This document shows positions 13,139-58,248 of a DNA stretch of 64,000 bases, piece by piece. The notes under the pieces are model-generated. The model was not told the DNA's origin and made no database searches. It saw only the letters and a program-made list of their open reading frames with translations. Position 1 is the stretch's first letter. Each line of letters starts with the position of its first letter. The translations under genes were made by a program, and so were the position numbers. The stretch lies in IMG/VR virus record IMGVR_UViG_3300012931_000759, positions 1 through 64,000 of that record; one strand, given 5' to 3'.

Positions 13139-14530
13139 ATGACGAAAACAATCAGTTTTGATTTCGGGACCTACGTGGAAGACAACCGCGCAACCCTGAA
13201 TCGCCGCCTGAAAGATGACGCCCCGGTGGCCGAAACTAGGCGCGCGCGCCGACAGAAGACCAGGAAGACCATTGCGAAGATCGCTACAGTCGCAAGGGAG
13301 GTGCTCGACATCTACACTGCGGTGAAGCGCAAGGATCCGATCTCCGTGGCGCTTGGTGCGCTCTCAGCATACGGCTGCGTCAGCGAGCTGTTCGAGAAGC
13401 CATCGCCGCAGGCCCAGGAGCACCTCAAGTCCATTGGGGCCACCAAGGTCTTCCCCATGATGTGCTCTTTTATCTTCCACACGCTTCAGCAGATGGATAT
13501 ACCAATCAAGCGCGCCTGGAGCTACTCTGATACCAGCGATGATGGGAACGAAACCAAGGAGGGAATCGAGGAGTTCGACCTTGGCGGCGATGTGAAGGTG
13601 TGGTTCATTAACTCGGGATCCGACGACAAGATGGAGGGTCCCGAGCATGGGCCGTATGTGCTCGATCAGGCCGCCTTCACGGCACGCTTATCGTCCGTTC
13701 TCGAAGAGAAGCTTAGCCGCATCATGGCGGTCAACACAATCGTGAAGGGGTGGGAAGACATGTACTATCTCGGCCCCCTGAGGATACCAACATCCCTTTA
13801 TGTCAGTCACATCGACGAGGACGAGCTGATGCGGCGTGTGTTTGAGCTACAGAAGCTCGGTTTTAATCGTTCGGTGCTTTTTTTCGGCCCGCCAGGCATC
13901 GGTAAGACTACCTTGGCTGCCAAACTAGCCGAGCGAATGGATGGCAGGCTGCTTGTGGCATCCTCTGCGATCCTGGATTCTCCGCGCGGGCGAACCATCT
14001 TGGAAGAGCTGACGGATCTGGTCGATCCGGCTGTCATACTGCTCGATGACCTGGACAAGATGTGGCGGCCAAGCGAGATGCTCGAGAGTATGGAGCGCCT
14101 CAATCGCAAAGTTGGAGTGCGCCGCCGCTTGATTATCGGGACTGTGAACACCCTCTCCGAGATCCCCGAGCCTCTGAGGAGGCCAGGACGTTTCGACGAG
14201 ATCGTGGAGTTCCCCCCGCTGACGCTCGAGCAGCGTCACGCCATCCTCGCCGTCTACACCAAGGAGTTCGGCTCCTCACTGACGGAGATACAGCTTGACA
14301 GGCTCGCGAGGGCCTCGAATGACATGACTGGGGCCTACCTGAAGGAGATTGCTATGCGGACCACGGTCGTTCCGTTCGACCTGATGTGTGAGCACATTGC
14401 ACAGATGAAGAGGATCTGTAACATGGTCGATAAGGTTGAGGAGACAAAGAAGGCAGAGAAGGTTCAGAAGCTGACCGAAAACCGCCGCCGCAAGGGCGGA
14501 TCCAAGACCAGACTGACAACACCAAGGTGA
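13139..14530 (+). CDS. AAA+ ATPase
   Basis: GPPGIGKT, ILLDDLD, RRPGRFD, MTGAYL. Confidence 0.85.
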   Translation: MTKTISFDFGTYVEDNRATLNRRLKDDAPVAETRRARRQKTRKTIAKIATVAREVLDIYTAVKRKDPISVALGALSAYGCVSELFEKPSPQAQEHLKSIGATKVFPMMCSFIFHTLQQMDIPIKRAWSYSDTSDDGNETKEGIEEFDLGGDVKVWFINSGSDDKMEGPEHGPYVLDQAAFTARLSSVLEEKLSRIMAVNTIVKGWEDMYYLGPLRIPTSLYVSHIDEDELMRRVFELQKLGFNRSVLFFGPPGIGKTTLAAKLAERMDGRLLVASSAILDSPRGRTILEELTDLVDPAVILLDDLDKMWRPSEMLESMERLNRKVGVRRRLIIGTVNTLSEIPEPLRRPGRFDEIVEFPPLTLEQRHAILAVYTKEFGSSLTEIQLDRLARASNDMTGAYLKEIAMRTTVVPFDLMCEHIAQMKRICNMVDKVEETKKAEKVQKLTENRRRKGGSKTRLTTPR

Positions 14531-14533
14531 ACG

Positions 14534-16852
14534 ATGGAAGTGATTCGACTACCTTTCCTGCCTTTGCGAGGGCAGAACCTCATCATGTTCCCGACGCTGG
14601 GATATCACGTCGACCTCACGCGCCCAGGCTCGCTGTCAACCGTCAGAAAGGCCATCGACACAGGAAAACGCATCGTCATCGGGTTCCATAAAGCTCTCCA
14701 GAAAGGATCCTCCACGAGAAGTACCGTCTCCGACTTCTGGGAGACGGGCTGCGAAGCGGTGATCAAGGACATTTCCGATCAGGGCGACGCTAAGTGCGTT
14801 TTCGTAGAGGGCGTACGACGCGTCAGGATCTGCGCAATCAGGGCCGACAAGGGCCTGTACTCCTGCGATTTCGAGCCAATTGGCGAACTTGAGTTCGAAA
14901 TGACCGACCATCTTGGCGAACTCGCTATGTATCTCCAGAGCTTGGCGCTCGGTCTTGAGAGTACGGCTGCTTTTTCGCCAATGGTTAAACCTAGGACAAG
15001 CGGCGATCTTGGCCGGTTCGTCGACACGATAGCCTTCAAGATCGCATCAACCAGCAAGGAGAGGATCAGACTGCTTCGCGCCACTGATACACGAAAGCGG
15101 ATCGAGATGTTACACATGATCCTAACCCACTTGGTAGAGCGCGAGAACGAGCGTATTGCTGAACAAACTGTCAAGGAGATGGCTGGGCAACAGAGTGGAG
15201 GATCTACGGCCACCATTACTACGAACAGGCCAGAAGCTCCGGTGGATGTTAAGGATTCCGAAGTTAAACGTCTGACTGACCTCGTAGCAGCCGCCGGGAT
15301 GAGCGACGAGGCCAAAGCTATTGCATCGGGTGAACTTCAGCGCCTACAGTTGATGTCCACCAGTTCGTCCGAATACAACGTCACGGTTACTTACCTCGAC
15401 ATCCTGGCCGGGCTGCCATGGTCCAAGATGAGCGAGGACCGGGTCGACATCGAGGAGGCCCGCCGGGTACTCGATGAGGATCATTACGGTCTACAAGAGC
15501 CGAAAGAGCGGATCTTGGAATTCCTGGCCGTGCGAAAGCTGACCGCAAAAAACGGCGGAGCAATCCTGTGCTTCACTGGTCCTCCGGGCGTGGGCAAAAC
15601 CAGCCTCGGGCGGAGCATCGCTAAGGCCACGGGTAGGGTCTTCATCCGCACATCCCTTGGTGGGGTGCGCGACGAGGCTGAGATTCGTGGTCACCGCCGG
15701 ACCTACATCAGCGCGCTGCCTGGACGGATCCTACAGGAGCTGCGCAAGGCCGATGTCAGGAATCCCGTGTTCATGCTGGACGAGATCGACAAGCTTAGCA
15801 AAGATGTCCATGGCGATCCGGCGTCCGCCCTCTTGGAGGCGCTCGACTCCGAACAGAATTTTGCTTTCAAGGATAACTACCTCGGGGCCGGGTTCGACCT
15901 CTCGCAGACCTTCTTTATCGGCACGGCGAACGATGTGTATGGCATGCCACCTGCGCTGCGAGATCGGCTTGAGATCGTGGAGATCCCAGGCTATTCTGCC
16001 ATGGCCAAGTCCCACATCGCTAGGAAGTACCTGATTCCCAAGCAAAAGGAAAAAAACGGCCTGGCGGATCGGGACATTGTCATCCTGGACGAGGCCATCG
16101 ATCACATTATTGGATCCTACACGAGCGAGGCCGGCGTCCGCGTGCTTGAGCGATGCTGCGGATCTATCTTCAGGAAGCTGGCTGTGTATGCCGCCGCAGA
16201 ACGCGATGTACCAAGCACCGTGGACACCAGGATGGTAAAGGAGCTACTTGGACCGCCCAAGCTATTTGTACAGAAAATGGCCGACAAGCCATTGGTTGGA
16301 ACCAGTACCGGCTTGGCATGGTCGGCAGCAGGCGGATCTATCCTATTCGTGGAATCGGCGTTGATTCCAGGCTCTGGCGGCTTAGAGATGACTGGGAACC
16401 TTGGGCAGATCTTACAGGAGTCAGCTCAGGTGGCACACACCTGGATCCTGACCAACGCAAAACGGTTCGGTATGGATACTGGGTCATTGGAGAAGAAGAC
16501 TATCCGTATTCATCTTCCCGCAGGAGCTATCCCGAAGGATGGTCCAAGTGCGGGTCTGGCCATGGTGGTTTCGGTCTTCTCGCTGTTGTTCAATATTCCA
16601 GCAAGGAACGATATCGCTATGACCGGCGAGATTTCCCTACGCGGCAAGGTCATGCCGGTCGGCGGGATCGTGGAAAAACTTCTGGCGGCGCATAGGGCTG
16701 GGATCAGAGAAATTATTCTGCCGAAGGACAATACAGACTCACTGACCGAGGTTCCCGAAGAGGTGGCGCGGGAGATGAGAATTCATCTGGTCGACCAGCT
16801 AGATGAGGTTCTAGATATCGCACTGGTCGAACGCAAGGAAATAGCGACTTGA
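14534..16852 (+). CDS. lon: Lon protease
   Basis: LON N-domain, GPPGVGKTS, GHRRTY, LDEIDK, PKDGPSAG, GGIVEKLLAAHRAG. Confidence 0.97.
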   Translation: MEVIRLPFLPLRGQNLIMFPTLGYHVDLTRPGSLSTVRKAIDTGKRIVIGFHKALQKGSSTRSTVSDFWETGCEAVIKDISDQGDAKCVFVEGVRRVRICAIRADKGLYSCDFEPIGELEFEMTDHLGELAMYLQSLALGLESTAAFSPMVKPRTSGDLGRFVDTIAFKIASTSKERIRLLRATDTRKRIEMLHMILTHLVERENERIAEQTVKEMAGQQSGGSTATITTNRPEAPVDVKDSEVKRLTDLVAAAGMSDEAKAIASGELQRLQLMSTSSSEYNVTVTYLDILAGLPWSKMSEDRVDIEEARRVLDEDHYGLQEPKERILEFLAVRKLTAKNGGAILCFTGPPGVGKTSLGRSIAKATGRVFIRTSLGGVRDEAEIRGHRRTYISALPGRILQELRKADVRNPVFMLDEIDKLSKDVHGDPASALLEALDSEQNFAFKDNYLGAGFDLSQTFFIGTANDVYGMPPALRDRLEIVEIPGYSAMAKSHIARKYLIPKQKEKNGLADRDIVILDEAIDHIIGSYTSEAGVRVLERCCGSIFRKLAVYAAAERDVPSTVDTRMVKELLGPPKLFVQKMADKPLVGTSTGLAWSAAGGSILFVESALIPGSGGLEMTGNLGQILQESAQVAHTWILTNAKRFGMDTGSLEKKTIRIHLPAGAIPKDGPSAGLAMVVSVFSLLFNIPARNDIAMTGEISLRGKVMPVGGIVEKLLAAHRAGIREIILPKDNTDSLTEVPEEVAREMRIHLVDQLDEVLDIALVERKEIAT

Positions 16853-21969: not shown

Positions 21970-22893
21970 ATGGACCGGACATTCTACGACGCCTTCGCCG
22001 GGATGGGTGGGATCAGGCTCGGCATGGAGCGTGCCGGGTTCCGCTGCGCGGGCTCGTGCGAGATCGACAGGGCCGCGCGTGCGACGTACGCGGCCAACTT
22101 CGGCGCGGAGCCGAAGCACGCGGACATTCGGGATGTGGAGTCTCTGCCGCGCGGAACGACCGTGCTGTGCGGAGGTTTCCCGTGCCAGGCGTTCTCCCAC
22201 CTTGGGCAGCGGCGCGGATTCAAGGATCCGAATGGCAACCTCTTTTTCGAGTTGGCGCGCCTAATGGACGCGTCGCGCCCAAGGGCCTGCCTATTCGAGA
22301 ACGTGAAGGGCCTGGTGAGCCACGACGGTGGCCGGACGCTCGGTACGGTTCTCGGTACGCTCGGGGAACTGGGGTACCACACGTCCTGGCAGGTTCTCGG
22401 GGCGCAGGACTTCGGGCTGCCGCAGCGGCGCGAGCGGGTCTTCATAGCCGGCTTCCGTCACCGGAAACATTGGGAAAGCTTCAGGTTTCCGGAGGGTTGG
22501 CCGATGGGGCCCAAGAAACCGTTGTCCGCGATCATGCAGAAGGGGGTCGGCAGGAACTTCGACGCCTCGTCCGCCGTCCTGGTGGGCTACCTGCGCAAGC
22601 TGCGCGAGAGGGGACCGAACAGGGGCGGCCGTTTCCTGCCCGCGCTCCACACGCCGAACGAGGTGGGGAACACCCTGGTCACGGACGGTGACAGGATCCT
22701 CGTGTTCGACGGCAACATAATCAGGCGTCTGACGCCGCGCGAGTGGGCGCGGATGCAGGGTTTTCCGGACAACTTCAGACTATCGGATGTGAAAACACAG
22801 GCATATCGGCAGATTGGGAACTCCGTGCCGGTGCCAGTTGTGGCTGCCGTTGCCAAGGCGATAGCCGCAGCCATGAATACAAGGAGGAAATGA
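21970..22893 (+). CDS. DNA (cytosine-5) methyltransferase
   Basis: FAGMGG, GFPCQAFS, ENVKGL, PQRRER, RRLTPRE, QIGNSV. Confidence 0.95.
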   Translation: MDRTFYDAFAGMGGIRLGMERAGFRCAGSCEIDRAARATYAANFGAEPKHADIRDVESLPRGTTVLCGGFPCQAFSHLGQRRGFKDPNGNLFFELARLMDASRPRACLFENVKGLVSHDGGRTLGTVLGTLGELGYHTSWQVLGAQDFGLPQRRERVFIAGFRHRKHWESFRFPEGWPMGPKKPLSAIMQKGVGRNFDASSAVLVGYLRKLRERGPNRGGRFLPALHTPNEVGNTLVTDGDRILVFDGNIIRRLTPREWARMQGFPDNFRLSDVKTQAYRQIGNSVPVPVVAAVAKAIAAAMNTRRK

Positions 22894-23249
22894 GAATGGT
22901 AGACATTGGTGAGATTCTGAAGGAAATAGCGCGTCTCCACCCAACCTTCACCCTGAAGATCGGGCAGGCCAATGGATCGCTCGTAGCCGAGATGCGTATC
23001 GCGAACCACAAGTCAGCTACGACCATGGGAACCAACTTGATCTCCATCTTGAATCAGGTACACGGTTTGGCCGTGAAGAATCTGGCCGACAGCCTCTTGG
23101 CAGAGAGCCGCCTAAGTGAGGCGGTGTTCGACAACAAGGTGACTGAGCTGGAGAGCGACTGCGGTGGGTGTGGATGTTCGTGCGCTGGGTGTAGTCTACA
23201 AGACGACAACGATGAGTACTCGGACGATTTCGACGACGACAACAACTGA
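22890..23249 (+). CDS. Hypothetical protein with Cys/acidic tail
   Basis: AGGAGG RBS; CGGCGCSCAGC tail. Confidence 0.5.
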   Translation: MRMVDIGEILKEIARLHPTFTLKIGQANGSLVAEMRIANHKSATTMGTNLISILNQVHGLAVKNLADSLLAESRLSEAVFDNKVTELESDCGGCGCSCAGCSLQDDNDEYSDDFDDDNN

Positions 23250-23281: not shown

Positions 23282-23461
23282 ATGGAGAAGCGTAAGTACG
23301 TATATGGCGACCTCGAAGTTATGATCGACGCCAGTCTGACCCCAGCCCAAGTGAAGGAGAACTGGGCCACGATCTACCCGGAACTAGGACACGCGGCCAT
23401 CGTGAACCGCGACGACGGCTCGGTGGAGTTCGTGGAGCAGCAAGCCACCAAGGGGCAGTAA
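23282..23461 (+). CDS. Prokaryotic ubiquitin-like protein (PRTRC protein C-like), 59 aa, absent from the ORF track
   Basis: MEKRKYVYGD...LTPAQVKENWATIYPELGHAAI...ATKGQ*; AAGGAG RBS. Confidence 0.8.
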   Translation: MEKRKYVYGDLEVMIDASLTPAQVKENWATIYPELGHAAIVNRDDGSVEFVEQQATKGQ

Positions 23462-23709
23462 TGGATGTCAAACGGATCTTCGACAGCCTTCCACAATGGT
23501 CGCGCACTCTTGGAGAAGAGCAGGCAGCCTTCCTCGATCAGCTGATGGCGGCCATGGATACGAAGGGTTTCTCGGGGATTCCGGTCGAGGAAATGCGCCG
23601 AATCCAAGAGCAACTGTTGCGCGCTAGCGAGGACGAGGGCCGCCAGGGGGGCATAAAGCGCGCGGCGGAAAACTTGGTTCCGGTCGTCTCCGGAACCAAT
23701 TTCATATGA
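23461..23709 (+). CDS. Hypothetical protein in the Ubl cassette
   Basis: TAATG coupling to the Ubl gene. Confidence 0.55.
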   Translation: MDVKRIFDSLPQWSRTLGEEQAAFLDQLMAAMDTKGFSGIPVEEMRRIQEQLLRASEDEGRQGGIKRAAENLVPVVSGTNFI

Positions 23710-23716
23710 GGGTGCC

Positions 23717-24337
23717 ATGAACAGGGCAACCGTCCTGAAACTCCAACAAATTGAGTTTTTCCTGCTGTATAGCCTGGTCGTGGACGAGCTGCAGCTAATC
23801 AAGCGGTCGAAGCGCATGACTCCGGCGTACCGTGCGAGAGCCTCTGCGCAGCAGCGCGAAGTCCTCATAGGGAGGTTGTTTCGCTCGTTCCTGGAGAAGG
23901 TATTTCGGCGCAATATTAGGATCTCGAAACGCCCATATTTCCAGGAATTCACAGTTGAGTTCGATGCGGACACGTGCGACCGGCTGCGGAACGCACAGGC
24001 TACGCACCATGACCTGTGCCGCACACTACAACCGACGGTTGAGGAGATTGGGTTTCTTCGCTTTAACTCCCCACAGTCACTGACCGTCACCATCATGACC
24101 GGCAACAAGCATAGGTACAACTACCGATATGGCTATGAGATAGGGGTGGCTGACATGGGAATCGGACGCTATTGCCCAGCGGTAAAGGCTGTCATGGCCT
24201 GGAGGGATCGTCTGGATACCGCGCTGGCCGCCTTGGACGCGGCCGAGATGGTCGGTCCACCAGAACCGAAACGTAACCAGGCGCAAGAACAGCTCGATGC
24301 CGTCCTCAAGGACGCTGCGAAGACTGGAAGGTTATGA
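23717..24337 (+). CDS. Hypothetical protein in the Ubl cassette
   Basis: GAGG RBS; ATGA-coupled to the E2 gene. Confidence 0.55.
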   Translation: MNRATVLKLQQIEFFLLYSLVVDELQLIKRSKRMTPAYRARASAQQREVLIGRLFRSFLEKVFRRNIRISKRPYFQEFTVEFDADTCDRLRNAQATHHDLCRTLQPTVEEIGFLRFNSPQSLTVTIMTGNKHRYNYRYGYEIGVADMGIGRYCPAVKAVMAWRDRLDTALAALDAAEMVGPPEPKRNQAQEQLDAVLKDAAKTGRL

Positions 24338-25026
24338 GGAGTATCAACATCAGCAAGGCCACACTCACCGTGGAAATCGGCGACGGATCCAGCGAAGCCG
24401 TGGCCAAGTTTAAAACCAAGGAAGGCGTCGTCGCGAAGACGATCTCTGTGGCCGACCTCCTGATAGAGCTTTCGCGCGATATGGAGATCACGACCGGCAT
24501 TCTGCCCGTGGGAACCAAATTCTATGCTGGAACGAAGAACTCATATCGGATCGGCGTCCAGGTTCCAGCCAAGGTGCGCTCGGCTGACTTTATGCTCCAC
24601 GAGGTCGGGACACGCAAGATGACGGTGCCGTTTCCCGAGATTCTGTTTGTGTTCAACATCAAGGATAAGCGGATCATAGAGTCGTCCCTGTACACGTGTA
24701 TCCCGCCAGTTGGCAGGCCGTACGATAGACTTTATTGCTTCCCGTTCGGGAATGTGTACGAGAACGGCAATATCTGCTGGGGAAATGCCGTCCATCCGGT
24801 GATCGGCGAGCCGATTGTCCTCGACAGCGTGGTGTCCCGCTTCTTCACCTCCGTGTTTAGTGGGCACATTGTCCACGGCACCAACATGTTCAACGCGCCC
24901 GAGGGCGTGGTGAATCTGAGGACTCTTCTCGAGCACCTGTCTGGACAGGAGCATTTTCCGGACAGGCTCCTGAAGCCCTCGGATGTAACAGTCGGTACGG
25001 CGATGGCCTCGCGCGACAGGAGATGA
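24334..25026 (+). CDS. Prokaryotic E2 family D protein (PRTRC protein B-like)
   Basis: VPFPEILF...LYCFPFGNVYENGNICWG...FFTSVF. Confidence 0.85.
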   Translation: MRSINISKATLTVEIGDGSSEAVAKFKTKEGVVAKTISVADLLIELSRDMEITTGILPVGTKFYAGTKNSYRIGVQVPAKVRSADFMLHEVGTRKMTVPFPEILFVFNIKDKRIIESSLYTCIPPVGRPYDRLYCFPFGNVYENGNICWGNAVHPVIGEPIVLDSVVSRFFTSVFSGHIVHGTNMFNAPEGVVNLRTLLEHLSGQEHFPDRLLKPSDVTVGTAMASRDRR

Positions 25027-25904
25027 CCGTGATGGAAAAAAACGCGGCGTTCGAAGACATGGTTGGGCATTTCATCGGCGTCCCGACAAAGTGCGACAAG
25101 CCCGTGTCATGGGCCATGTGCGGAGACGGTCTTTGGGAAATCCGTAGGAATTCCCTCGGGATCTTCCGTAGGCACGTGGCCGAGGCGGCAATTCCTGGCC
25201 TCCCATCGGGACTCGAGGAGGGGTTTGACCTCGCGCTGCCGAAGGTGCCGGTCTCCCTCTTGTGGCAGACTGTATCTTTTTTCCGACACGTGTACTCGCT
25301 TCATCAGAGCGAGGCAGCTGTGCGCGTAGTGTGGAACCGCAAAACCAGGAAATACCTGCTCGACTGTCCGTCGCAGGACGTGAGCGCAGCCCGGTGTAAT
25401 TTCGACAGGCACAAGACCATCGAGAATTCCGTGGTGGTGGCGGAGATCCATAGTCACGGTCAGATGACCGCCGGGTTCTCCGGAACAGACGACAAGGACG
25501 AACTTGCCGACCGATTCTACGGCGTTGTCGGGAAAGTGCTCGACTTTTTCCCCCAGATGACCTTCCGCCTGGCCATCGGCGGCAACCACCTGGACGTTGA
25601 TATCTGCGATCTGTTCGACACGGCAAACGACCCGATGCTGGGTGCCAAGTTCCCGCTTGGCTGGATCGACCTAGTAAGGAAGCGGGAAGTGAAACCTCTC
25701 CGGTTTTCCAAAGGGCTGCGGAGGTTTCTCGATGATCCGGATGACCCGGAAAACGAAAGATCCCTGAGCTGTGATTCCGTGTTTGGGTCCGATGCGAATG
25801 GCGACAACCCCACCGATGAAGAGATGTGGGACGCCATGGATGTCATCGAAGCCGAGGAGGACGAGGAGCAGGAACAATGGCGAAAATATCAAAGAAGGCG
25901 GTAG
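25023..25904 (+). CDS. JAB/MPN metallo-isopeptidase (PRTRC protein A-like)
   Basis: LPKVP, SEAAV, EIHSHGQMTAGFSGTDDKDE, YGVVG. Confidence 0.9.
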   Translation: MTVMEKNAAFEDMVGHFIGVPTKCDKPVSWAMCGDGLWEIRRNSLGIFRRHVAEAAIPGLPSGLEEGFDLALPKVPVSLLWQTVSFFRHVYSLHQSEAAVRVVWNRKTRKYLLDCPSQDVSAARCNFDRHKTIENSVVVAEIHSHGQMTAGFSGTDDKDELADRFYGVVGKVLDFFPQMTFRLAIGGNHLDVDICDLFDTANDPMLGAKFPLGWIDLVRKREVKPLRFSKGLRRFLDDPDDPENERSLSCDSVFGSDANGDNPTDEEMWDAMDVIEAEEDEEQEQWRKYQRRR

Positions 25905-26770
25905 AGGCGCCAGTCTTGCCGGATATCAAGGCCATGAGCGGGTTCCAGCGGCCGCAAACTATCCTGGTGGTGGGATGCGGTGGAACAGGTGCCTACGTAG
26001 TCGGCCATCTGGCTCGTCTGGTGGCCGTCCTGAACCAGGCGCCAAGCGCGCCATACCAAGGATTTCACATCGTCCTGGCCGACGGGGACAAGGTGGAGCG
26101 CAAAAACCTGGAACGACAGCATTTCATCCAGAACGACCTCGACCTAAACAAGGCGGAAGTCCTGGCCACCAGGTACTCCGGGGCGTTTGGTATTGAGATC
26201 CGCGCTATCACATCTTACATCGAGGATATCTACATCATTGAGAGCGTTGCTCCACAGCTGGTGATCGGCTGCGTGGATAACAACGCATCAAGACGTGTAA
26301 TCCACGAATGGATGCTCTACAATCGCGAATACTGCCCAGACCGATTCTGGATCGACTCTGGCAACGAGGAAAATTCTGGACAGGTCGTGTGCGGGTTTGG
26401 TCCTAACTACTCTCAGGGTTCACAGAGCGATGACGAGGATAGCGGCTACAAGTTCAGCCTGCCGATGGTGACGGAGGTATACCCCAATCTGATGAAGGCC
26501 GGAGAGGACGAGAAGTTTGCCTCGCAGATGAGCTGCGCCGAGCTGGCCCAGGCAGCGCCCCAGAACATGATGACCAACATTACTGCGGCCACGATCATCC
26601 TGAATTTCGCGCAGAAGATTCTGCGCGGCAAGGCCCTGCGGACCCATGGGGCCATTTTCTCGGTGGACAATTCCTTCCGGACGCTTCTCAACACGCCGGA
26701 GAACCTGGACAAGGTCAACTCCAAGCGGCGGAGAAGCTGGGAGCAGACAGTACTAGTACAGACGATCTGA
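25877..26770 (+). CDS. ThiF/E1-like activating enzyme (PRTRC type)
   Basis: GCGGTG, DGDKVERKNLERQ, NKAE, GCVDN, WIDSGNE, SCAE. Confidence 0.9.
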   Translation: MAKISKKAVEAPVLPDIKAMSGFQRPQTILVVGCGGTGAYVVGHLARLVAVLNQAPSAPYQGFHIVLADGDKVERKNLERQHFIQNDLDLNKAEVLATRYSGAFGIEIRAITSYIEDIYIIESVAPQLVIGCVDNNASRRVIHEWMLYNREYCPDRFWIDSGNEENSGQVVCGFGPNYSQGSQSDDEDSGYKFSLPMVTEVYPNLMKAGEDEKFASQMSCAELAQAAPQNMMTNITAATIILNFAQKILRGKALRTHGAIFSVDNSFRTLLNTPENLDKVNSKRRRSWEQTVLVQTI

Positions 26771-26789: not shown

Positions 26790-27146
26790 ATGAATAATAC
26801 CACAAAGAACCAGAACCTCCCCTTCGCAACTGACGAGGAGTGTGAACAGCTCAGGCAGCGACTGGTACGCGCGGGCAAGATCGTTCCGGCCAAGCGCGTT
26901 GTAACTGCGACCGCAACAATCAAGCAGATTGCCGATGATTCTGACCTAGAGTTTGGGTCGCCCAGGCGCAGACGCAACGCGGCTGACGTTCCCGAGGAGG
27001 GCGTATACAGGATCCGCAAGATCACAAGTGACAAGGAGTACGAGAGCCGCAAGCGCAGTTATTTCGAAATGCTCCAGTCCGTACTTAGGTCAAGGATCGA
27101 GCTTGACCTTGAGTTTGGAGAGCATGAGGAGTTGGAGGGGACATAG
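26790..27146 (+). CDS. Hypothetical protein
   Basis: AGGAG RBS, 118-aa ORF. Confidence 0.5.
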   Translation: MNNTTKNQNLPFATDEECEQLRQRLVRAGKIVPAKRVVTATATIKQIADDSDLEFGSPRRRRNAADVPEEGVYRIRKITSDKEYESRKRSYFEMLQSVLRSRIELDLEFGEHEELEGT

Positions 27147-27206
27147 AGCAATTCTACCAGCTCATCGTACACTCTGTACAGATTGCTTAAACCGGAGCAG
27201 GATATA

Positions 27207-28556
27207 ATGTATTCCCTGAAAACAGACCTCTACCAGATAGCCATGATGGCCGGGTACTTTCATGGCGGAATGGCCGATAAGGTTGTGACCTGCGAGGCCT
27301 TCGCCCGCAAGCTGCCATCAAAACGCCGGTTCCTGGTCATGGCCGGCACCGAGGAGATCCGCGAGACGCTCGTCGGTCTGTGCTTCATGGGCACGGACAT
27401 CGAGTTTCTGCGGAGCATTCCGGCGCTGCGCAAGGTCATGACGCCAGCTTTCGAAGAGTGGCTGCTCAATTTCCGATTCACCGGTGACATGTGGGCCATG
27501 GCCGAGGGCGAGATCGTCTTCCCAGGCGAGCCGCTGGTTAGGATCACGGCGCCGGTCGCGCAGGCCCAACTTGCCGAGACCATGGTCCTGTCAGTCCTCA
27601 ATCACGACATGAGAGTTGCCTCGAAGGCGGCCAGGATCGTCCTGGCTGCGCGCGGCAAGCCGCTCATGGAGTTCGGCACGCGCCGGACGCACCACGAGGC
27701 TGCTCTCTACTCTGCGAGAGCTGCCTATCTGGCTGGATTCTCGGGGACATCCAACGTGGAGGCTGGCCTGCGATTCGGAATCCCGGTCATGGGCACCGTA
27801 GCTCACATGTGGACCATGGTCCATCAATCAGAGGCGGACGCTTTCAAGAAGTGGTCGGAACTGTGGGACAATCCGACTTTTCTGATCGACACCTACGACA
27901 CACTGCGCGGAGCTAGGCTGGTGGCTGGGATCAGGAACGCCTCCATGGTGAGGATCGATTCCGGGGACCTCTTGTCTCAATCGAAACTCGTAAGGTACAT
28001 TCTCGATGAAGGCGGATGTAAGGCAGGCATCGTTGTCTCCGGGGACCTAGACGAATACGCGGTCCATGAGCTTGTCTCATCAGACGCGCCAATCGACAGC
28101 TTCGGGATCGGCACTAAACTGGTCGCTCCGGACGACGCGCCATCTCTTGGGATCGTGTACAAGGCTGTCTACGACGAGACGGAGGCCAGGCCGCTCATGA
28201 AAACCTCGGGCGGCAAAGCAACCATGCCTGGCAGGAAACAGGTTTTCCTCGACCAACGCGAGGGCGGCTGGACCCATCTAGTCGCCTTGGACGGGGAGCT
28301 GGAGTCATCCGAGCTGCTCAGCCCACTGCTCGACAGGCATATCGCTGGCGGATTCATCGTGGACGGAGTGCGCGATGTGACCCTAGAGGTGTCGAGACGG
28401 TACTGTAACGCGGCGCTCGGATCGCTTTCGGCCCTTCCGGTCGGATACGACCTTTCGTCTATACTAGAGCCGAGCGTCGGCGTCCCGGTCAAGGCACACG
28501 ACAGCCTTACCAAAATGTTCGTGTCGGCGCGTTGCGCCATGGAGTCCGACGAATGA
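27207..28556 (+). CDS. pncB: Nicotinate phosphoribosyltransferase
   Basis: TDLYQIAM, EFGTRR, GTSNV, GTVAH, LIDTYD, VRIDSGD, FGIGT, GIVYK. Confidence 0.92.
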   Translation: MYSLKTDLYQIAMMAGYFHGGMADKVVTCEAFARKLPSKRRFLVMAGTEEIRETLVGLCFMGTDIEFLRSIPALRKVMTPAFEEWLLNFRFTGDMWAMAEGEIVFPGEPLVRITAPVAQAQLAETMVLSVLNHDMRVASKAARIVLAARGKPLMEFGTRRTHHEAALYSARAAYLAGFSGTSNVEAGLRFGIPVMGTVAHMWTMVHQSEADAFKKWSELWDNPTFLIDTYDTLRGARLVAGIRNASMVRIDSGDLLSQSKLVRYILDEGGCKAGIVVSGDLDEYAVHELVSSDAPIDSFGIGTKLVAPDDAPSLGIVYKAVYDETEARPLMKTSGGKATMPGRKQVFLDQREGGWTHLVALDGELESSELLSPLLDRHIAGGFIVDGVRDVTLEVSRRYCNAALGSLSALPVGYDLSSILEPSVGVPVKAHDSLTKMFVSARCAMESDE

Positions 28557-29461
28557 TGGAGCTGCTTTGGGGACGAGGAGGTGGACACACGATGTTCGAT
28601 CCCTATTCCCTCCAGCATGTGGTGTGGTTCTTCGCGATTACGGTCGCGCTGGCTGCACTGCGGTTCAGGCACTTGTGGGCATGGGTCCTCGGATTGGCGG
28701 CCCTGTGGGAAGTTGCCGAGTGGTGGATCGTCGACAACCTACCAGGGTTCCCCTTCGTCGGTCGTGAGGATATGTTGAACAAGGCGATAGGCGACCCGAT
28801 CAGCGACCTCGCCGGGTTCGCGCTTGGCCTGGTTGCCATGCGCGCCGTCCACCTGGTCATGAGCCGAAAGCCAGATTCGTTTGTCATGCTCCTGGAGCGG
28901 GCGAAGCGTTTGGCTGAGAAGGCGCACAGTGGGCAGAGATATGGCAGTTTTCCGTACACGCATCACCTTTTTGGAACCTGGGATGTGCTCGAGAAGTTCT
29001 GTTTCACCGGCAGAGAGCATGACAAGCCAAGGAGAGAGCGTAGTCGACGCCTGATCCTGGCTGCCATTCTACATGATACGCTGGAGGATACTGACCTGAC
29101 ATATGGAGAACTTGAAGACAACTTCGGGCGTGAGGTTGCTGATTTGGTTTTTGCCGTGACCAACGAGCCGGGAGCGAACCGCAAGGAGCGCTTCCTTAAG
29201 ACATACCCGAAGATCAAGGCTCACCCAGATGCTACAATATTAAAGCTGGCCGACAGGATCGCGAACATAATTCATGCCCTACAGTCAAACTGGGACATCC
29301 TGGTAATGTACAGGAAGGAATGGCCCATTTTCGAGCGCGAACTCCGGCGTCCGGGGGAGTGCGACCCAATGTGGGCGTATCTGGAGTCCATTTTGATACC
29401 CACGGATTCCGCTGGACAACAAGGTGCCAAAGCACCCTTTTTGGAGAACAAACATGGATGA
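28553..29461 (+). CDS. HD-domain (p)ppGpp hydrolase-like protein (Mesh1/SAH) with N-terminal membrane segment
   Basis: HSGQRYG..PY..H, AILHDTLEDT, LKLADRIAN; hydrophobic first ~100 aa. Confidence 0.8.
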   Translation: MMELLWGRGGGHTMFDPYSLQHVVWFFAITVALAALRFRHLWAWVLGLAALWEVAEWWIVDNLPGFPFVGREDMLNKAIGDPISDLAGFALGLVAMRAVHLVMSRKPDSFVMLLERAKRLAEKAHSGQRYGSFPYTHHLFGTWDVLEKFCFTGREHDKPRRERSRRLILAAILHDTLEDTDLTYGELEDNFGREVADLVFAVTNEPGANRKERFLKTYPKIKAHPDATILKLADRIANIIHALQSNWDILVMYRKEWPIFERELRRPGECDPMWAYLESILIPTDSAGQQGAKAPFLENKHG

Positions 29462-29906
29462 GAAAAGGCCACAGCCCGCCTGGCGGCGGGACAGTCAGCA
29501 GGGGCGGAGGGATGATCGCGGACAGCGTCGCGACCAGCGCGACAGACGTCGGCAAGACAGCCCTCCGCCAGAGAGACGCGCCCCGGTGGTGGGGCCGCTT
29601 GAGGTCGAGGTCTACAACAACGATGTCGGACAGGCTCTGAAAGTTCTCAAAAACAAATTGGCAAAAGATGGGATCCTAGCAGAACTCAAGGCGCGCCGCC
29701 ATGCGGAAAAGCCTTCCGAAAAGAAAAGGCGCAAACATCGGGAAGCCCTGAAGCGTTTGCGGAAATCAAAAGGTAAACGTCGTCAGGGAGGTTGGAGACC
29801 TGATAGACCAAAGGCTTCCGAGTCCAGACCAATTCGGGAATCGGCCACGCCTGTTGACCAAATCGCAAATGCGCCAGCAGCATCGGATATAAAGGATCCA
29901 AAGTAG
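29454..29906 (+). CDS. rpsU: Ribosomal protein bS21 with low-complexity extensions
   Basis: VEVYNNDVGQALKVLK...GILAELKARRHAEKPSEKKRRK. Confidence 0.85.
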   Translation: MDEKRPQPAWRRDSQQGRRDDRGQRRDQRDRRRQDSPPPERRAPVVGPLEVEVYNNDVGQALKVLKNKLAKDGILAELKARRHAEKPSEKKRRKHREALKRLRKSKGKRRQGGWRPDRPKASESRPIRESATPVDQIANAPAASDIKDPK

Positions 29907-31467: not shown

Positions 31468-31515
31468 CTCTGTTCTGGCATTGTGTCGTTTTTTGACAAG
31501 ATTTGGAAGAGGACG

Positions 31516-32562
31516 ATGCGAACAGTTAGCAGCCTAGTGGCTCTAGTTTTCCTTGTTGCTACCTTTGCGGCTTGCGACGACGAATCATCCCTGCCTTATG
31601 TGCATGTCGACAGCGGAGTGACCGATGTGGGAATGCCTAGCGTTCCGAATACGACATCCTACCCGCGCTATCTGTCCTGGGCCAACATCGACACGGACGG
31701 AGATGGGATCGGTGAGAACTACATCACCTCTGTAAAGAGACAGTCCTGCTCTGATTGCTATATGTATGTAGCAACGGCACTTGTAGAGGCTAGATGGCAG
31801 ATCGACCACAAGGCTGCCGTGTCCCTCGACCTATCCGAGCAGAACATTCACAACTGTATGAAAATACCATGCGATGGCGTAGGGGATCTGTGGTGGATGT
31901 TCGACTATATACGGAATTACGGTGTGATGCCCGAGGAGAATATGCCGTCTGGCATGTGGCTTCCTTCCTGCGAGAACTGCCTTGGGATCGCATGGAGCGG
32001 AATCGGACCCCTTTCGATACGTAATGTACCGTTCTACCGCATCACAAAGTACGACACACTTCCATTCCAGAAAGAATACGCGAAGCGCAAGGATGCGCTG
32101 GTTGCCGCGCTCCAGGAGGGGCCTGTAGGAATAGGGATTAACTCCTGGTATGGATACACAAACTACAACGGCGTTCTATATTGCGATGATCCTAAACCTG
32201 TAGGATCCGGGCATGTTGTCCTCGTAGTCGGCTACCTCGAAAGCGGGATGGCTTTTCTGGTGAAAAACAGCCATGGCGAAGGAAAGCTGATCACTATGGT
32301 CTTCGCGGGCGGTGACAAGTGTGGATTTGCCTCCGAGATGATCAAGCTCTCGCCCGGCAGCGTCTATATCTCGTGGGGATGGGGCGAGACGTTTTGCTAC
32401 TCCACGCTTGACAGCGACGGAGATGGTGTCCCCAATTCGCATGACAATTGTCCATGGAATTCAAATGCTGATCAGATGGACTCCGACCTGGACGGATGGG
32501 GAGACGCATGCGACCGTTGTCCAAAGGACAAAGGCCCTACAGGGTACTACTGTTCCCCTTAA
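31516..32562 (+). CDS. Papain-like (C1) cysteine peptidase lipoprotein with thrombospondin type-3 repeats
   Basis: FAAC lipobox, [40 protein letters not shown]...DGWGDACD. Confidence 0.8.
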
Positions 32563-35643: not shown

Positions 35644-37122
35644 ATGGGCGCATCGATGAAGGTCAAAGCCTGGACGGACGGGGAAAAAGGCCAACCATCT
35701 TTCCCATCTAATTTCTCTGTCACTAAACGTTGGGAGGGTAGCTGTACCAGCTTGGCAAAAAATAGCAATAAATTCTTCCACATAGAGGTACAGGTTGCCC
35801 TAAACGGGCAAGCTCGCATTTACACGGTGTATGGTCGTGTAGGAAACAGCGGCGCACGAGAGTTTCGGTATTACTCTTCGGAGGCTGCTTGTTTGTCGGA
35901 CTATGAAGCACTGATCCACAAAAAACGCGATCGGAAAAAGGAGCCTTATACGGAGATCGACCTGGCCATCACGTCCGTTGGCTCCGAGGGTGCAAAGGCA
36001 ATCACCAAGCCGATGACTGGCATCTCGGCCTCGTCCGCTCCGGAGCAGAAAAGCACGCTCCATGCCGAGATACAACGGTTGGTGCGCCGATGGTTCGGGG
36101 ATACAGGACACTTCGTCGAAATGAACCTCAAATGCCCACTGGGCCAGCTGAGTGTCGAGCAAATCGACAAGGGGCGCGCCGTCCTGGATGAGTGTCGCAA
36201 CCGGATCAACACAAAAAGGAAAACCGATGAGGCCGAGTGGGATATGCTGACGTCCCAATTCTACAGCCTTGTACCTCATGTTCTCCCACGAAAAATCGAC
36301 GCTAGTGCCCTGCGGCTCGATGCCATAGACCGTATTATGGCAAGATCGGATATTCTTGACACTTTCCTTGACGCCAAGAATGTAGCCTCGGTTCTGGCTA
36401 AAGGCACGTCGGCGGATGCGCAGTATGCCAAACTACAGGCAAAGATGGAGTGGATGGATCCGCAGGATCCTGTTCGCCAATGGATAGAAAAACTTGTCCA
36501 CGAAACAAGGGCAAAGAACCACGCAGGTCTAGGCAGGCTCAAGGTGTTCAATGTATTCAGACTTTTGCGCAATGGGGAACTGGATCATTTTTCCGCCTCG
36601 CTCGAACGGATAGGCAGAGAAGTCAAAGGCAAAGGCCAGAAGCCAAGGTTTACCACCTTAGAACGCCCTGATTTGAGCAAAGACGAGCAGCAGGCTTTCG
36701 TGAATGCTAATGTCTGGCCCTTGTGGCACGGGACGCAGCCACAGAACATGGTCGGCATCATCTCGGCTGGACTGAAGATCAGACCTTCCGGATCGGTTTA
36801 CTCTGGCAGTATGTTTGGTGATGGAGCTTACTTTGCCGAGTCTTTTAGTAAGAGCGCAAACTATTCTGGTTGTAGGGGATCTTACTGGAGTAGAGATAGC
36901 GGGGAAGACAGAGCATTCGTGTTCTTGAACGATGTAATCATAGGCAATCCGCATATCGTATACACCTCCCAGTTTTTCCATGAGCCACCGTTCGGCACGC
37001 ATAGTGTGTATGCTCTGCCAGGACGGGGACTTTACAACTCGGAGAACATCACCTACAAACAATCTGGAGCTGGACAGCAGAACAGACTGCGCTATATCGT
37101 GGAGTTTCAATCGAACCAGTAG
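35644..37122 (+). CDS. PARP-like ADP-ribosyltransferase (WGR + helical regulatory + catalytic domains)
   Basis: NSNKFF...YGRVG (WGR), LTSQFYSLVPH, LWHGT, GSMFGDGAYFA, KSANY, NSE (H-Y-E triad). Confidence 0.9.
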   Translation: MGASMKVKAWTDGEKGQPSFPSNFSVTKRWEGSCTSLAKNSNKFFHIEVQVALNGQARIYTVYGRVGNSGAREFRYYSSEAACLSDYEALIHKKRDRKKEPYTEIDLAITSVGSEGAKAITKPMTGISASSAPEQKSTLHAEIQRLVRRWFGDTGHFVEMNLKCPLGQLSVEQIDKGRAVLDECRNRINTKRKTDEAEWDMLTSQFYSLVPHVLPRKIDASALRLDAIDRIMARSDILDTFLDAKNVASVLAKGTSADAQYAKLQAKMEWMDPQDPVRQWIEKLVHETRAKNHAGLGRLKVFNVFRLLRNGELDHFSASLERIGREVKGKGQKPRFTTLERPDLSKDEQQAFVNANVWPLWHGTQPQNMVGIISAGLKIRPSGSVYSGSMFGDGAYFAESFSKSANYSGCRGSYWSRDSGEDRAFVFLNDVIIGNPHIVYTSQFFHEPPFGTHSVYALPGRGLYNSENITYKQSGAGQQNRLRYIVEFQSNQ

Positions 37123-58117: not shown

Positions 58118-58248
58118 AGGACGCGCAAAGGGGAAAAGTCTACAAGCGAATTAGCTCAGTCGGTTTGAGCGTCTGACTATGGATCAGAAGGTCAAGGGTT
58201 CAAATCCCTTATCCGCGACAAAATCCGACTTGCTCACTCGCGCGTCCT
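58118..58248 (+). ncRNA. Y-RNA-like RNA: terminal stem enclosing an Arg-like tRNA body with ATG anticodon (family copy A3)
   Basis: AGGACGCG/CGCGTCCT, CAAA, AAGTC/GACTT, TACAAGC, cacTCG; TCTGA ctATGga TCAGA. Confidence 0.75.

What the first reader, a model, noticed from the sequence alone, without database searches (positions are those of the whole stretch)
23282..26770. Complete ubiquitin-like conjugation cassette (Ubl-E2-JAB-E1) including an unannotated 59-aa Ubl ending TKGQ
Seen: a tightly packed run of Ubl (missed by the ORF track), two unknown ORFs, E2 family D, JAB and ThiF/E1. Known: these are the PRTRC cassette components, whose protein C typically ends in TKG. PRTRC cassettes are described mainly from plasmids/ICEs with a ParB gene, and no ParB is visible here. 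Inference: the extra Gln makes this a pro-form needing JAB trimming, and the two unknown ORFs may be adaptors or substrates. A phage copy could modify host proteins, interfere with Ubl-based defences, or feed Lon/AAA+ proteases.
Basis: partly seen in the sequence, partly recalled or inferred. Interest (0 to 1): 0.68.

Follow-up and report, generated by a model that had tools for sequence, protein, structure and literature searches.

The report
Ubiquitin-like tagging cassette in huge phage
A 340-kb wetland phage carries an intact, conserved ubiquitin-like tagging operon of the uncharacterised PRTRC/"6d" kind; relatives that encode the tag as tandem copies, like polyubiquitin, show it is made as a precursor that must be cut after a terminal glycine.

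Summary
Window 23282-26770 (+) encodes a real 59-aa beta-grasp Ubl, two unknown proteins (82 and 206 aa), an E2 family D protein (Cys148), a JAMM/JAB peptidase (E97, H143xH145, S153, D156) and a ThiF-type E1. All are tightly packed and all catalytic motifs are intact.

The window is the start of a 340-kb phage record. The same gene order recurs in at least seven other loci, six of them on 20-452 kb huge-phage-like contigs. E2-JAB-E1 cores occur in about 60 of 80 related viral loci.

It is a divergent relative of the PRTRC / Iyer-2006 "6d" operon. It is not a canonical PRTRC: ParB, protein E and protein F are not detected, and C, B, A and ThiF all score below NCBIfam cutoffs.

The pro-form idea is well supported by comparison. 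The Ubl domain always ends in KG. After KG come 0 residues, 1 variable residue (this clade), 62-95 residues, or further Ubl copies. These include a di-Ubl and a five-repeat poly-Ubl in cultured Bacillus phage vB_BceM_WH1.

That JAB does the cutting, and what the targets are, remain inferred. A link to Lon is not general. This is a new variant of a known but unstudied kind, of moderate interest.

The parts
22890..23249 (+). 119-aa protein with a Cys cluster and an acidic tail, directly upstream. It sits in the slot of PRTRC protein E. Membership of the system is uncertain.
   Evidence: AAGGAGG lies 5 nt before ATG 22890. It is conserved at this position in L005, L006 and L008, weakly in L009 and L012, and absent in L010. 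It shows no similarity to Dina PRTRC_E.
23282..23461 (+). Ubl precursor, 59 aa, beta-grasp. It has an invariant K57-G58 followed by one variable residue (Gln59).
23453..23458 (+). Codons for Gly58 and Gln59: the predicted processing site (cut after Gly58).
   Evidence: Alignments.
23461..23709 (+). p82: an 82-aa, mostly helical accessory protein with an invariant extreme C-terminal [F/Y]-Ile.
   Evidence: Its start overlaps the Ubl stop. It is present after the Ubl in all 8 loci compared, including L010 in a different genomic context. Bacillus phage WH1 gp212 is a probable homologue ending DFI. No family or fold could be assigned.
23674..23699 (+). 10-bp GC-rich hairpin at the 3' end of the p82 gene. 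It may be a partial terminator or attenuator.
   Evidence: -30.8 kcal/mol for the 80-nt stretch. The count of terminator-like sites in the region is no higher than in shuffled sequence, so this is weak evidence.
23717..24337 (+). p206: a 206-aa alpha+beta accessory protein restricted to this clade. It sits in the slot of PRTRC protein F.
   Evidence: Only 25 representatives score E<1e-3 among 1.84 billion proteins. Alignments A2 and A3 show an invariant Pro36 in the KRxTP motif. The AF2 model has pLDDT 89 and pTM 0.78. It has no convincing fold match and no similarity to PRTRC_F.
24334..25026 (+). E2-like protein (Prok-E2_D / PRTRC_B-like) with candidate catalytic Cys148 in the motif ICWG, and His178.
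   Evidence: The Cys is invariant in 8 loci and aligns with the Cys of Dina PRTRC_B.
25023..25904 (+). JAB/JAMM metallopeptidase with an N-terminal JAB-N domain (W38, R41) and a variable acidic C-terminal tail.
   Evidence: The motif E97...H143-S-H145-x7-S153-x2-D156 is invariant in 8 loci.
25877..26770 (+). ThiF-type E1 adenylating enzyme, 297 aa. The reading frame is open from GTG 25826.
   Evidence: Invariant in 58 sequences: GCGGTG 33-38, D69-G-D71, R80-Q81, K92, D134 and Cys220. Cys172 is nearly invariant.
26790..27146 (+). 118-aa protein that always follows the E1 in the huge-phage clade. It may be a seventh member of the operon. Function unknown.
   Evidence: It is conserved after E1 in L005, L006, L008, L009, L011, L012, L013-L016, often overlapping the E1 stop. 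It is absent in L010. No family hit.

Best explanation
This is a working, phage-encoded ubiquitin-like conjugation pathway of the PRTRC / '6d' type.

Proposed steps, all inferred from homology and comparison rather than shown biochemically:
1. The 59-aa Ubl is made as a precursor. A peptidase, most likely the cassette's own JAMM/JAB enzyme, removes Gln59 and exposes Gly58.
2. The ThiF-type E1 adenylates the Gly58 carboxylate with ATP. It may hold the Ubl as a thioester on an invariant Cys (Cys220 or Cys172).
3. The Ubl passes to Cys148 of the E2-like protein.
4. The Ubl is attached to amino groups of target proteins in the infected cell. The JAB enzyme can probably also reverse this.

p82 (with its invariant C-terminal Phe/Tyr-Ile) and p206 are clade-specific accessory factors. 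They could select targets, act as chaperones, or be substrates themselves. The targets are not known. The family is found in phages, plasmids and ICEs, which suggests a role when a mobile element establishes itself in a host or takes it over.
For: Intact parts:
- Family matches for E2, JAB and E1.
- Catalytic Cys, JAMM and adenylation motifs are invariant across 8 loci and 58 E1 sequences.
- The Ubl is coding, conserved and models as beta-grasp. It is homologous to PRTRC_C.

Operon structure:
- Overlapping stops and starts: TAATG between Ubl and p82, 4-nt overlaps at p206/E2 and E2/JAB, and a 28-nt overlap at JAB/E1.

Conservation:
- The same order (Ubl, p8x, p2xx, E2, JAB, E1) holds in L005, L006, L008, L009, L010, L011 and L012, down to 44% E1 identity, and in one unrelated genomic context.
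- 180 viral stretches encode related E1s. E2 and JAB are found in 61 and 60 of the 80 loci fetched.

Precursor processing:
- KG is invariant.
- Tails after KG are 0, 1 or 62-95 residues.
- L011 has a di-Ubl whose two repeats differ at synonymous sites, so it is not an assembly artefact. Five further loci (L059, L061, L062, L067, L069) carry an identical 140-aa di-Ubl.
- WH1 gp211 is a penta-Ubl.
- This mirrors eukaryotic polyubiquitin precursors, which also end in one extra residue (textbook knowledge).
Against: - No biochemical evidence exists for any PRTRC or 6d system.
- The Ubl's own family scores are weak (E about 1e-3), and its fold-search Z values are only 4-5.7.
- The E1-Ubl complex prediction gave no answer.
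- His178 of the E2 is Asp in the more distant loci, so E2 chemistry may differ between lineages.
- No RNA data are available.
- The peptidase that trims the precursor could be a different enzyme.
- The targets are unknown.
Confidence: 0.6

Rival explanations
1. The system modifies the phage's own proteins, for example virion or assembly proteins, rather than host proteins. The Ubl would then end up in or on the particle.
For: The penta-Ubl gp211 of cultured Bacillus phage vB_BceM_WH1 is annotated 'virion structural protein' and sits next to another such gene, gp208.
Against: The basis of the WH1 annotation is unknown, and no paper was found. The same protein is 'hypothetical' in phages Edson and KLEB27-3. 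In the window the cassette lies among DNA and NAD metabolism genes, not structural genes.
Confidence: 0.2
2. The Ubl is a degradation tag that delivers proteins to the phage-encoded Lon or AAA+ protease, in the manner of pupylation or SAMPylation.
For: Lon (14534-16852) and an AAA ATPase (13139-14530) lie 6.4 kb upstream. Lon lies 1.8-7 kb upstream of the cassette in L005, L006, L008, L009, L012, and next to L014 and L016.
Against: These genomes are collinear, so adjacency is not independent evidence. Lon_C is absent from six 100%-complete jumbo-phage records and from WH1, all of which carry the cassette or its E1. Only 3 of 10 records checked have it. L010 and L011 show no Lon within 6 kb.
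Confidence: 0.1
3. It is a counter-defence device aimed at host Ubl-based immunity (Bil, CBASS Cap2/Cap3). The JAB would strip host conjugates, or the phage Ubl/E1/E2 would compete with host enzymes.
For: It is carried by phages, plasmids and ICEs, all of which face such defences. JAB peptidases do reverse Ubl conjugation in CBASS and Bil (recalled from the literature; the papers appear in the listing but were not read).
Against: Ubl, E2 and JAB have no PADLOC match. The E1 has only weak hits (E 2e-5 to E1-E2 fusion models, 9e-4 to BilD). A full E1-E2-Ubl set is more than a deconjugase needs.
Confidence: 0.1
4. It is a sulfur-carrier or other adenylation pathway (ThiS/MoaD-like or MccB-like) rather than a protein-tagging system.
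For: The nearest solved relatives of the E1 by sequence are ThiF and MccB (E about 1e-7). MoaD and TtuB appear among the fold matches of the Ubl.
Against: - An E2-like protein with an invariant Cys is always present.
- The Ubl is encoded as poly-Ubl precursors in some phages.
- The E1 has no rhodanese or sulfurtransferase domain.
- The C-terminus is KG, not GG.
- The residue after Gly is not fixed as Asn, so MccB-type chemistry is unlikely.
Confidence: 0.07
5. It is an inactive relic or passenger DNA with no function in the phage.
For: All four PRTRC-like components score below the curated cutoffs. No expression data are available.
Against: Catalytic residues are invariant. Substitutions in the Ubl gene fall mostly at third codon positions. 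The cassette keeps a fixed position in many diverged huge phages. The same DNA was found in two independent wetland studies.
Confidence: 0.03

Closest known systems
PRTRC system (NCBIfam TIGR03734-TIGR03742), e.g. Ralstonia phage Dina gp02-gp07
   Same: Same order: Ubl (C), accessory protein, E2-like (B), JAB (A), ThiF. These are the best NCBIfam hits for all four components. The catalytic Cys and His of B align, the JAMM motif of A aligns, and the KG end of the C domain aligns. Both are carried by mobile elements, including phages.
   Different: - No ParB, no protein E and no protein F.
- All scores are below the trusted cutoffs.
- There is an extra p82 gene.
- p206 is unrelated in sequence to protein F.
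- The Ubl has a 1-residue tail, against the 62-aa extension in Dina.
- The host element is a 340-kb lytic-type huge phage.
Operon type '6d' of Iyer, Burroughs and Aravind 2006 (PMC1779556)
   Same: Small Ubl with a conserved C-terminal Gly. JAB with an N-terminal alpha+beta domain bearing a conserved Arg and Trp. E1-like protein. E2-like protein with a Cys and a downstream His. Plus a fast-evolving extra protein (one search compared).
   Different: The extra protein here (p206) models as alpha+beta rather than all-helical. The paper does not describe p82, the downstream 118-aa protein, or poly-Ubl precursors for 6d. It lists only bacterial genomes.
Eukaryotic ubiquitin precursors (polyubiquitin with one extra C-terminal residue)
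   Same: Head-to-tail Ubl repeats, or a single extra residue after the terminal Gly, must be removed before E1 activation (textbook knowledge for ubiquitin).
   Different: The C-terminus is KG, not RGG. The Ubl is about 57 aa. The likely processing enzyme is a JAMM metalloprotease encoded in the same operon. Sequence identity to ubiquitin-family structures in the fold search is low, mostly under 15%.
Bacterial Bil (BilABCD) and CBASS Cap2/Cap3 Ubl-type systems
   Same: E1, E2 and JAB chemistry in prokaryotes, linked to phage-host conflict (papers listed).
   Different: Those systems are host defences with other E2 and JAB families and fused E1-E2 proteins. Here the E1 gives only weak PADLOC hits and the other parts give none. 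This system is on the phage side.
Bacillus jumbo phages vB_BceM_WH1, Edson and KLEB27-3 (gp211-gp216 in WH1)
   Same: Same module order: Ubl, p82-like (C-terminal DFI), large unknown protein, E2, JAB, E1. E1 identity is 35%. The Ubl profile match is 97% probability.
   Different: The Ubl is a five-repeat precursor with a 15-aa tail. The protein in the p206 slot is 509 aa and unrelated. The downstream neighbour is NADAR, not the 118-aa protein and NAPRTase.

Membership tests
PRTRC system (NCBIfam) | ParB-related protein (TIGR03734) | tested here: not met
   No match to TIGR03734 (E<=1) or to Pfam ParB_N in the whole 340-kb record. The record is estimated 84% complete.
PRTRC system (NCBIfam) | PRTRC ThiF-family protein (TIGR03736, cutoff 144.75 bits) | tested here: inconclusive
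   It is the best hit, E 3.8e-39, but at 134.5 bits it is just under the cutoff.
PRTRC system (NCBIfam) | Proteins A (JAB), B (E2-like) and C (Ubl) at equivalog level | tested here: inconclusive
   A scores 67.6 against 101.8, B 47.4 against 131.45, and C 19 against 45.95 bits. Homology is clear, but all three fall below the cutoffs.
PRTRC system (NCBIfam) | Proteins E (TIGR03741) and F (TIGR03742) | tested here: not met
   No NCBIfam hit at E<0.1 for the ORFs in those slots. BLASTP and hhalign against Dina E and F are negative. The Dina proteins themselves match the models strongly.
Iyer 2006 operon type 6d | Small beta-grasp protein with a conserved C-terminal glycine | tested here: met
   K57-G58 is invariant. 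The domain ends in KG in every viral relative examined. The model is beta-grasp-like.
Iyer 2006 operon type 6d | JAB peptidase with an N-terminal alpha+beta domain bearing a conserved Arg and Trp | tested here: met
   W38 and R41 lie in GDGLWEIRR, and the JAMM motif is intact. The Arg is invariant in 8 loci. The Trp is replaced in 3 distant loci.
Iyer 2006 operon type 6d | E2-like protein with a conserved Cys and a His C-terminal to it | tested here: met
   Cys148 is invariant. His178 is present here and aligns with the His of Dina protein B. It is Asp in L009-L012.
Iyer 2006 operon type 6d | Rapidly diverging alpha-helical protein with conserved charged residues | tested here: inconclusive
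   p206 is fast-evolving and sits in the right slot, but it models as alpha+beta. Only Pro36 is invariant across the wide alignment.
JAMM/JAB metallopeptidases | Motif E...HxHx7Sx2D | tested here: met
   E97, H143, H145, S153 and D156 are invariant in 8 loci.
E1-like adenylating enzymes (ThiF/MoeB/Uba) | GxGxxG nucleotide loop, the R-Q, Lys and Mg-binding Asp motifs, and a candidate catalytic Cys | tested here: met
   These positions are invariant in the 58-sequence alignment A4. The Pfam ThiF score is 57.8 bits against a cutoff of 28.1.
Bil / CBASS (Cap2-Cap3) defence Ubl systems | Matches to the PADLOC models of these systems | tested here: not met
   Only weak E1 hits (E 2e-5 and weaker). 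Nothing for Ubl, E2, JAB, p82 or p206.
Any Ubl conjugation system | E1-dependent adenylation, thioester relay and isopeptide conjugates | not testable with these tools
   This needs biochemistry. The one structure-based proxy, the E1-Ubl complex prediction, gave no answer.

The most novel reading that the evidence does not exclude
Huge and jumbo phages share a self-contained, polyubiquitin-like modification system. The Ubl is encoded as mono(+1), di- or penta-repeat precursors, which an operon-encoded JAMM peptidase would release. An E1/E2 pair then conjugates it, with a previously unrecognised partner (p82, invariant C-terminal Phe/Tyr-Ile) taking part. The tag would be attached to virion proteins or to key host proteins. 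If so, this would be the first functional ubiquitin-type pathway shown to be run by bacterial viruses.
Probability: 0.25. Interest if true: 0.8.

Novelty: new variant of a known kind. Interest (0 to 1): 0.55.

Why it matters
PRTRC/6d cassettes have been annotated for about twenty years, yet no function has been shown. A 2026 paper still states that the function has not been studied.

This work adds three things:
- A divergent form of the cassette is a fixed, conserved feature of a large group of huge phages. Related cores are common in viral contigs: 180 matching stretches, with 20 of the 80 fetched loci on contigs of 200 kb or more.
- Comparative evidence shows the tag is made as a precursor and released after a terminal Gly, much as ubiquitin is.
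- Cultured, tractable representatives exist (Bacillus cereus phages vB_BceM_WH1 and Edson), in which the pathway and its targets could be found.

Host Ubl systems (Bil, CBASS Cap2/Cap3) have recently been shown to act in anti-phage defence. A complete Ubl pathway on the phage side is an obvious gap in that picture.

Tried and rejected
- DNA similarity of the cassette to 50,697 phage records: no match.
- tblastn of the 59-aa Ubl against the same records: no match.
- The search for related loci with the single E1 sequence: nothing. The alignment-based scan did work.
- PHROGs: no hit for any cassette protein.
- PADLOC: only weak E1 hits.
- p82 and p206: no family, nothing useful in the ESM Atlas. 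p206 has no convincing fold match by Foldseek in the PDB (best E 0.08), by the wide VIA search (best Z 6.6, to generic aminotransferase C-terminal domains and T3SS-chaperone-like folds), or in the Atlas (best TM 0.44).
- p82, p206 and the upstream protein against Dina PRTRC F and E, by BLASTP and hhalign: negative.
- PDB sequence search with E2 and JAB: no relative.
- Foldseek for the Ubl model: nothing below E 0.2, though the top rows are beta-grasp domains.
- Complex prediction for E1 plus Ubl: 'no answer', score 0.12. This is neither support nor evidence against. The tool was busy on five earlier tries.
- Promoter and terminator scan: counts at chance level.
- Sequencing runs: only DNA runs from wetland metagenomes, no RNA, so expression could not be checked.
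- The 89-aa protein of the second JAB-ThiF module shows no sequence relation to the Ubl.
- Literature: nothing on a Ubl system in huge or jumbo phages, and no paper on WH1 or KLEB27-3.
- Only genetic code 11 was used.

Full report
**What is there**

The window is the first 64 kb of a 340,392-bp IMG/VR virus record, estimated 84% complete by CheckV. Almost all genes are on the + strand. The record has a large terminase gene at 162.5 kb. The window also holds seven tRNA genes, Lon, GroEL, PARP, ligases and a ribosomal protein S21 gene. This is a huge phage. Near-identical DNA is held by wetland metagenomes from two independent studies.

Between 23282 and 26770 on the + strand lie six tightly packed ORFs:
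- a 59-aa ORF, 23282-23461
- an 82-aa ORF, 23461-23709
- a 206-aa ORF, 23717-24337
- a 230-aa E2 family D protein, 24334-25026
- a 293-aa JAB peptidase, 25023-25904
- a ThiF-type E1, open from 25826 and most likely starting at ATG 25877

Stops and starts overlap: TAATG between the Ubl and p82, 4-nt overlaps at p206/E2 and E2/JAB, and 28 nt at JAB/E1. This is typical of one translationally coupled operon.

**Is the small ORF a real Ubl?**

Yes, with good confidence.
- It has GGAG 8 nt before the ATG.
- It has 11 homologues of 57-61 aa at 64-78% identity. JGI names some of them 'PRTRC genetic system protein C', and some carry a precomputed Prok_Ub hit.
- Substitutions among four orthologues fall mostly at third codon positions: 32-40, against 8-19 at positions 1 and 2.
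- Its own HMM scores are weak: Prok_Ub 1.6e-3 and PRTRC_C 1.2e-3.
- The family profile matches the Ub-like domain of Ralstonia phage Dina PRTRC_C (87% probability, E 3.6e-6). It also matches the repeat of Bacillus phage WH1 gp211 (97%, E 7e-11, 45% identity).
- The AlphaFold model has pLDDT 87 and a beta-beta-alpha-alpha-beta-beta order, with a disordered tail at residues 56-59.
- Foldseek gives nothing significant. Both its top rows and 50 of the best VIA matches are almost all beta-grasp domains (Raf RBD, GB1, ubiquitin variants, MoaD, SUMO, ISG15, TtuB), at Z 3.9-5.7 over nearly the whole model.
- Those Z values are modest in absolute terms. The fold assignment rests on the uniformity of the match list together with the sequence homology.

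**The enzymes look active**
- E2: Pfam Prok-E2_D scores above the gathering cutoff. Cys148 (motif ICWG) is invariant in 8 loci and aligns with the Cys of Dina PRTRC_B. His178 aligns with the conserved His of that family, but is Asp in the four most distant loci.
- JAB: a complete JAMM motif (E97, H143, H145, S153, D156) is invariant in 8 loci. An N-terminal domain carries W38 and R41, as described for the '6d' JAB-N domain.
- E1: the nucleotide loop GCGGTG, D69-G-D71, R80-Q81, K92, D134 and Cys220 are invariant in 58 sequences. The nearest solved relatives by sequence are ThiF, MccB, UBA6 and UBA5.

**Relatives and what they show**

The Ubl led to three syntenic loci, and the E1 to four more diverged ones (E1 identity 44-49%). 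Six of the seven lie on 20-452 kb contigs with the same huge-phage neighbourhood. All seven keep the order Ubl (59-62 aa), p8x (78-97 aa), p2xx (187-272 aa), E2_D, JAB, ThiF.

One of them, L010, sits in a quite different neighbourhood (AraC regulator, zeta toxin/ParD, Kelch protein). It lacks the upstream protein, the downstream 118-aa protein and NAPRTase. This argues that the six genes form the unit. A caveat: the homology of L010's 256-aa protein to p206 is doubtful.

An alignment-based scan of IMG/VR found 180 viral stretches with a related E1. Of the 80 loci fetched, 20 lie on contigs of 200 kb or more. My narrow profiles found an E2 in 61 and a JAB in 60, mostly in the order E2, JAB, E1.

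Cultured phages carry it too.
- Ralstonia phage Dina has a RefSeq-annotated canonical PRTRC set: E-C-F-B-A-ThiF.
- Bacillus jumbo phages vB_BceM_WH1, Edson and KLEB27-3 hold the closest E1s among cultured phages, at 34-36% identity.
- The WH1 module runs gp211 (Ubl repeats), gp212 (p82-like), gp213 (509 aa, unknown), gp214 (E2, E 1.5e-25), gp215 (JAB, E 9e-40), gp216 (E1), gp217 (NADAR).

**The precursor question**

This is the strongest new result. In the window's clade, K57-G58 is invariant and is followed by one residue that varies freely (Q, A, L, N, R). One homologue ends at KG, but it comes from a short contig.

The more distant orthologues L009, L010 and L012 stop directly after KG: AAG GGG TAA, AAA GGC TAA and AAA GGC TAG.

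Across the viral loci, the Ubl domain always ends in [T/S/N/D/R/K/E]-K-G. What follows falls into four classes:
- nothing
- one residue
- a 62-95-aa extension, as in canonical PRTRC_C
- another Ubl copy

L011 (the same record as L015, a 244-kb contig) encodes a head-to-tail di-Ubl. Each copy ends AGTKG, and one final Val follows. The two DNA repeats differ at many synonymous sites, so this is not an assembly artefact. A third Ubl-like paralogue that lacks KG comes next.

Five further loci (L059, L061, L062, L067, L069) carry an identical 140-aa di-Ubl.

WH1 gp211 is five head-to-tail repeats, each ending QAGTKG, plus a 15-aa tail.

Such genes can only yield a Ubl with a free Gly carboxylate if a peptidase cuts after KG. 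That the operon's JAB is this peptidase is an inference. It rests on the constant co-occurrence of the two genes and on what JAMM enzymes do in other Ubl systems.

**The two unknown ORFs**

p82 is mostly helical and has no family or fold assignment. It follows the Ubl in all eight loci compared. Its extreme C-terminus is always Phe/Tyr-Ile (NFI, DFI, PFI, DYI, TFI, EYI). WH1 gp212 sits in the same slot, ends DFI, and matches the p82 profile weakly (hmmsearch 1.8e-4; hhalign E 1.6e-4, 50% probability). An invariant free C-terminus suggests a docking motif, but this is speculation.

p206 belongs to a small, fast-evolving family: 25 representatives at E<1e-3 among 1.84 billion proteins. It gives a confident alpha+beta model (pLDDT 89) with no convincing structural relative. 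It has no similarity to PRTRC_F. It occupies the slot that protein F holds in PRTRC and that gp213 holds in WH1.

Whether p82 and p206 are adaptors, E3-like factors or substrates cannot be decided here.

A 118-aa protein directly after the E1 is conserved throughout the huge-phage clade, often overlapping the E1 stop. It may be a seventh member.

**Comparison with known systems**

The cassette corresponds to operon type '6d' of Iyer, Burroughs and Aravind 2006. That type has a Ubl with a C-terminal Gly, a JAB with JAB-N, an E1-like protein, an E2-like protein with a Cys and a downstream His, and a fast-evolving extra protein. TIGRFAM later named it PRTRC.

As a member of PRTRC in the strict sense it fails:
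- ParB is absent from the whole record.
- Proteins E and F are not detectable.
- The four shared proteins score below their curated cutoffs.

It is therefore best described as a divergent, ParB-less phage variant of the 6d/PRTRC kind.

It is not a Bil or CBASS-type system by PADLOC models.

No experimental study of PRTRC was found. A 2026 paper on Burkholderia prophages says its function has not been studied, and repeats the untested idea that it is a partitioning cassette. A 224-genome jumbo-phage survey does not mention it.

**Biological role**

The role is unknown.

The Lon idea: Lon and an AAA ATPase sit 2-8 kb upstream throughout this clade. However, Lon_C is missing from six complete jumbo-phage records and from WH1, all of which carry the cassette or its E1. 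A general Lon coupling is therefore unlikely.

The virion idea rests only on the unexplained 'virion structural protein' label of WH1 gp211.

The cassette's neighbours have an NAD/ADP-ribose flavour: NAPRTase, an HD/SpoT-like hydrolase and a PARP in the window, and NADAR in WH1. This may be no more than shared gene order.

**Verdict**

This is a new variant of a known but uncharacterised kind. It now comes with a clear, testable processing model and with cultured phages in which to test it.

Noticed in passing
G000:C1:64007-65321 (L003:762-2076), just past the window's end: A second, minimal module: a 136-aa JAB (motif HTHx7Sx2D), an 89-aa protein ending PFGA, and a 193-aa ThiF (Pfam E 6e-27). 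There is no E2. The 89-aa protein shows no sequence relation to the Ubl.
   Followed up: partly
LC597490.1 178788-179687 (L095:1289-2188): Bacillus phage vB_BceM_WH1 gp211, annotated 'virion structural protein', is five head-to-tail Ubl repeats, each ending QAGTKG, plus a 15-aa tail. The same gene is found in phages Edson (96% identity) and KLEB27-3 (50%). The basis of the annotation is unknown.
   Followed up: partly
L011:2547-3079 (= L015:1532-2064): A di-Ubl whose repeats have diverged at synonymous sites and which ends in one extra Val. It is followed by a third Ubl-like paralogue ending IED, with no KG, which may not be conjugatable.
   Followed up: partly
window 23701-23706, and the matching ends in L005-L012 and WH1 gp212: The extreme C-terminus of p82 is always Phe/Tyr-Ile, across very distant phages. 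This may be a docking motif.
   Followed up: no
L009:3192-3240, L011:3079-3140, L012:3518-3575; window 23674-23699: Strong GC-rich hairpins lie directly after the Ubl stop in three distant loci; the one in L011 is followed by T7. In the window a 10-bp hairpin lies at the end of p82 instead. This could give more Ubl (and p82) transcript than enzyme transcript.
   Followed up: partly
window 27183-28556, 28532-29461, 35644-37122; L001:5833-6306: An NAD/ADP-ribose theme surrounds the cassette. NAPRTase follows it in 7 of 8 loci. The window also has an HD/SpoT-like hydrolase and a WGR-PARP_reg-PARP protein with the eukaryote-like domain order. In WH1 a NADAR protein follows the E1.
   Followed up: no
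window 13139-16852: A phage-encoded AAA ATPase and a full-length Lon protease lie 6.4 kb upstream. Lon stays beside the cassette in this clade, but is absent from six complete jumbo-phage records and from WH1, which carry the cassette or its E1.
   Followed up: yes
window 29424-29906: A ribosomal protein S21 homologue (Pfam E 8e-16) with an N-terminal extension of about 60 aa. It is conserved at this position in the relatives.
   Followed up: partly
window 58145-58219: ARAGORN calls a tRNA-His with anticodon ATG rather than the usual GTG. It is one of seven tRNA genes between 55850 and 58219.
   Followed up: no
window 31483-32562: A papain-family (C1) cysteine peptidase with a thrombospondin type 3 repeat, which is unusual for a phage.
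   Followed up: no
window 22890-23249: The upstream 119-aa protein has a CxxCxCxCxxC-like Cys cluster followed by a strongly acidic tail. This is conserved in the nearest relatives only. It may bind metal.
   Followed up: no
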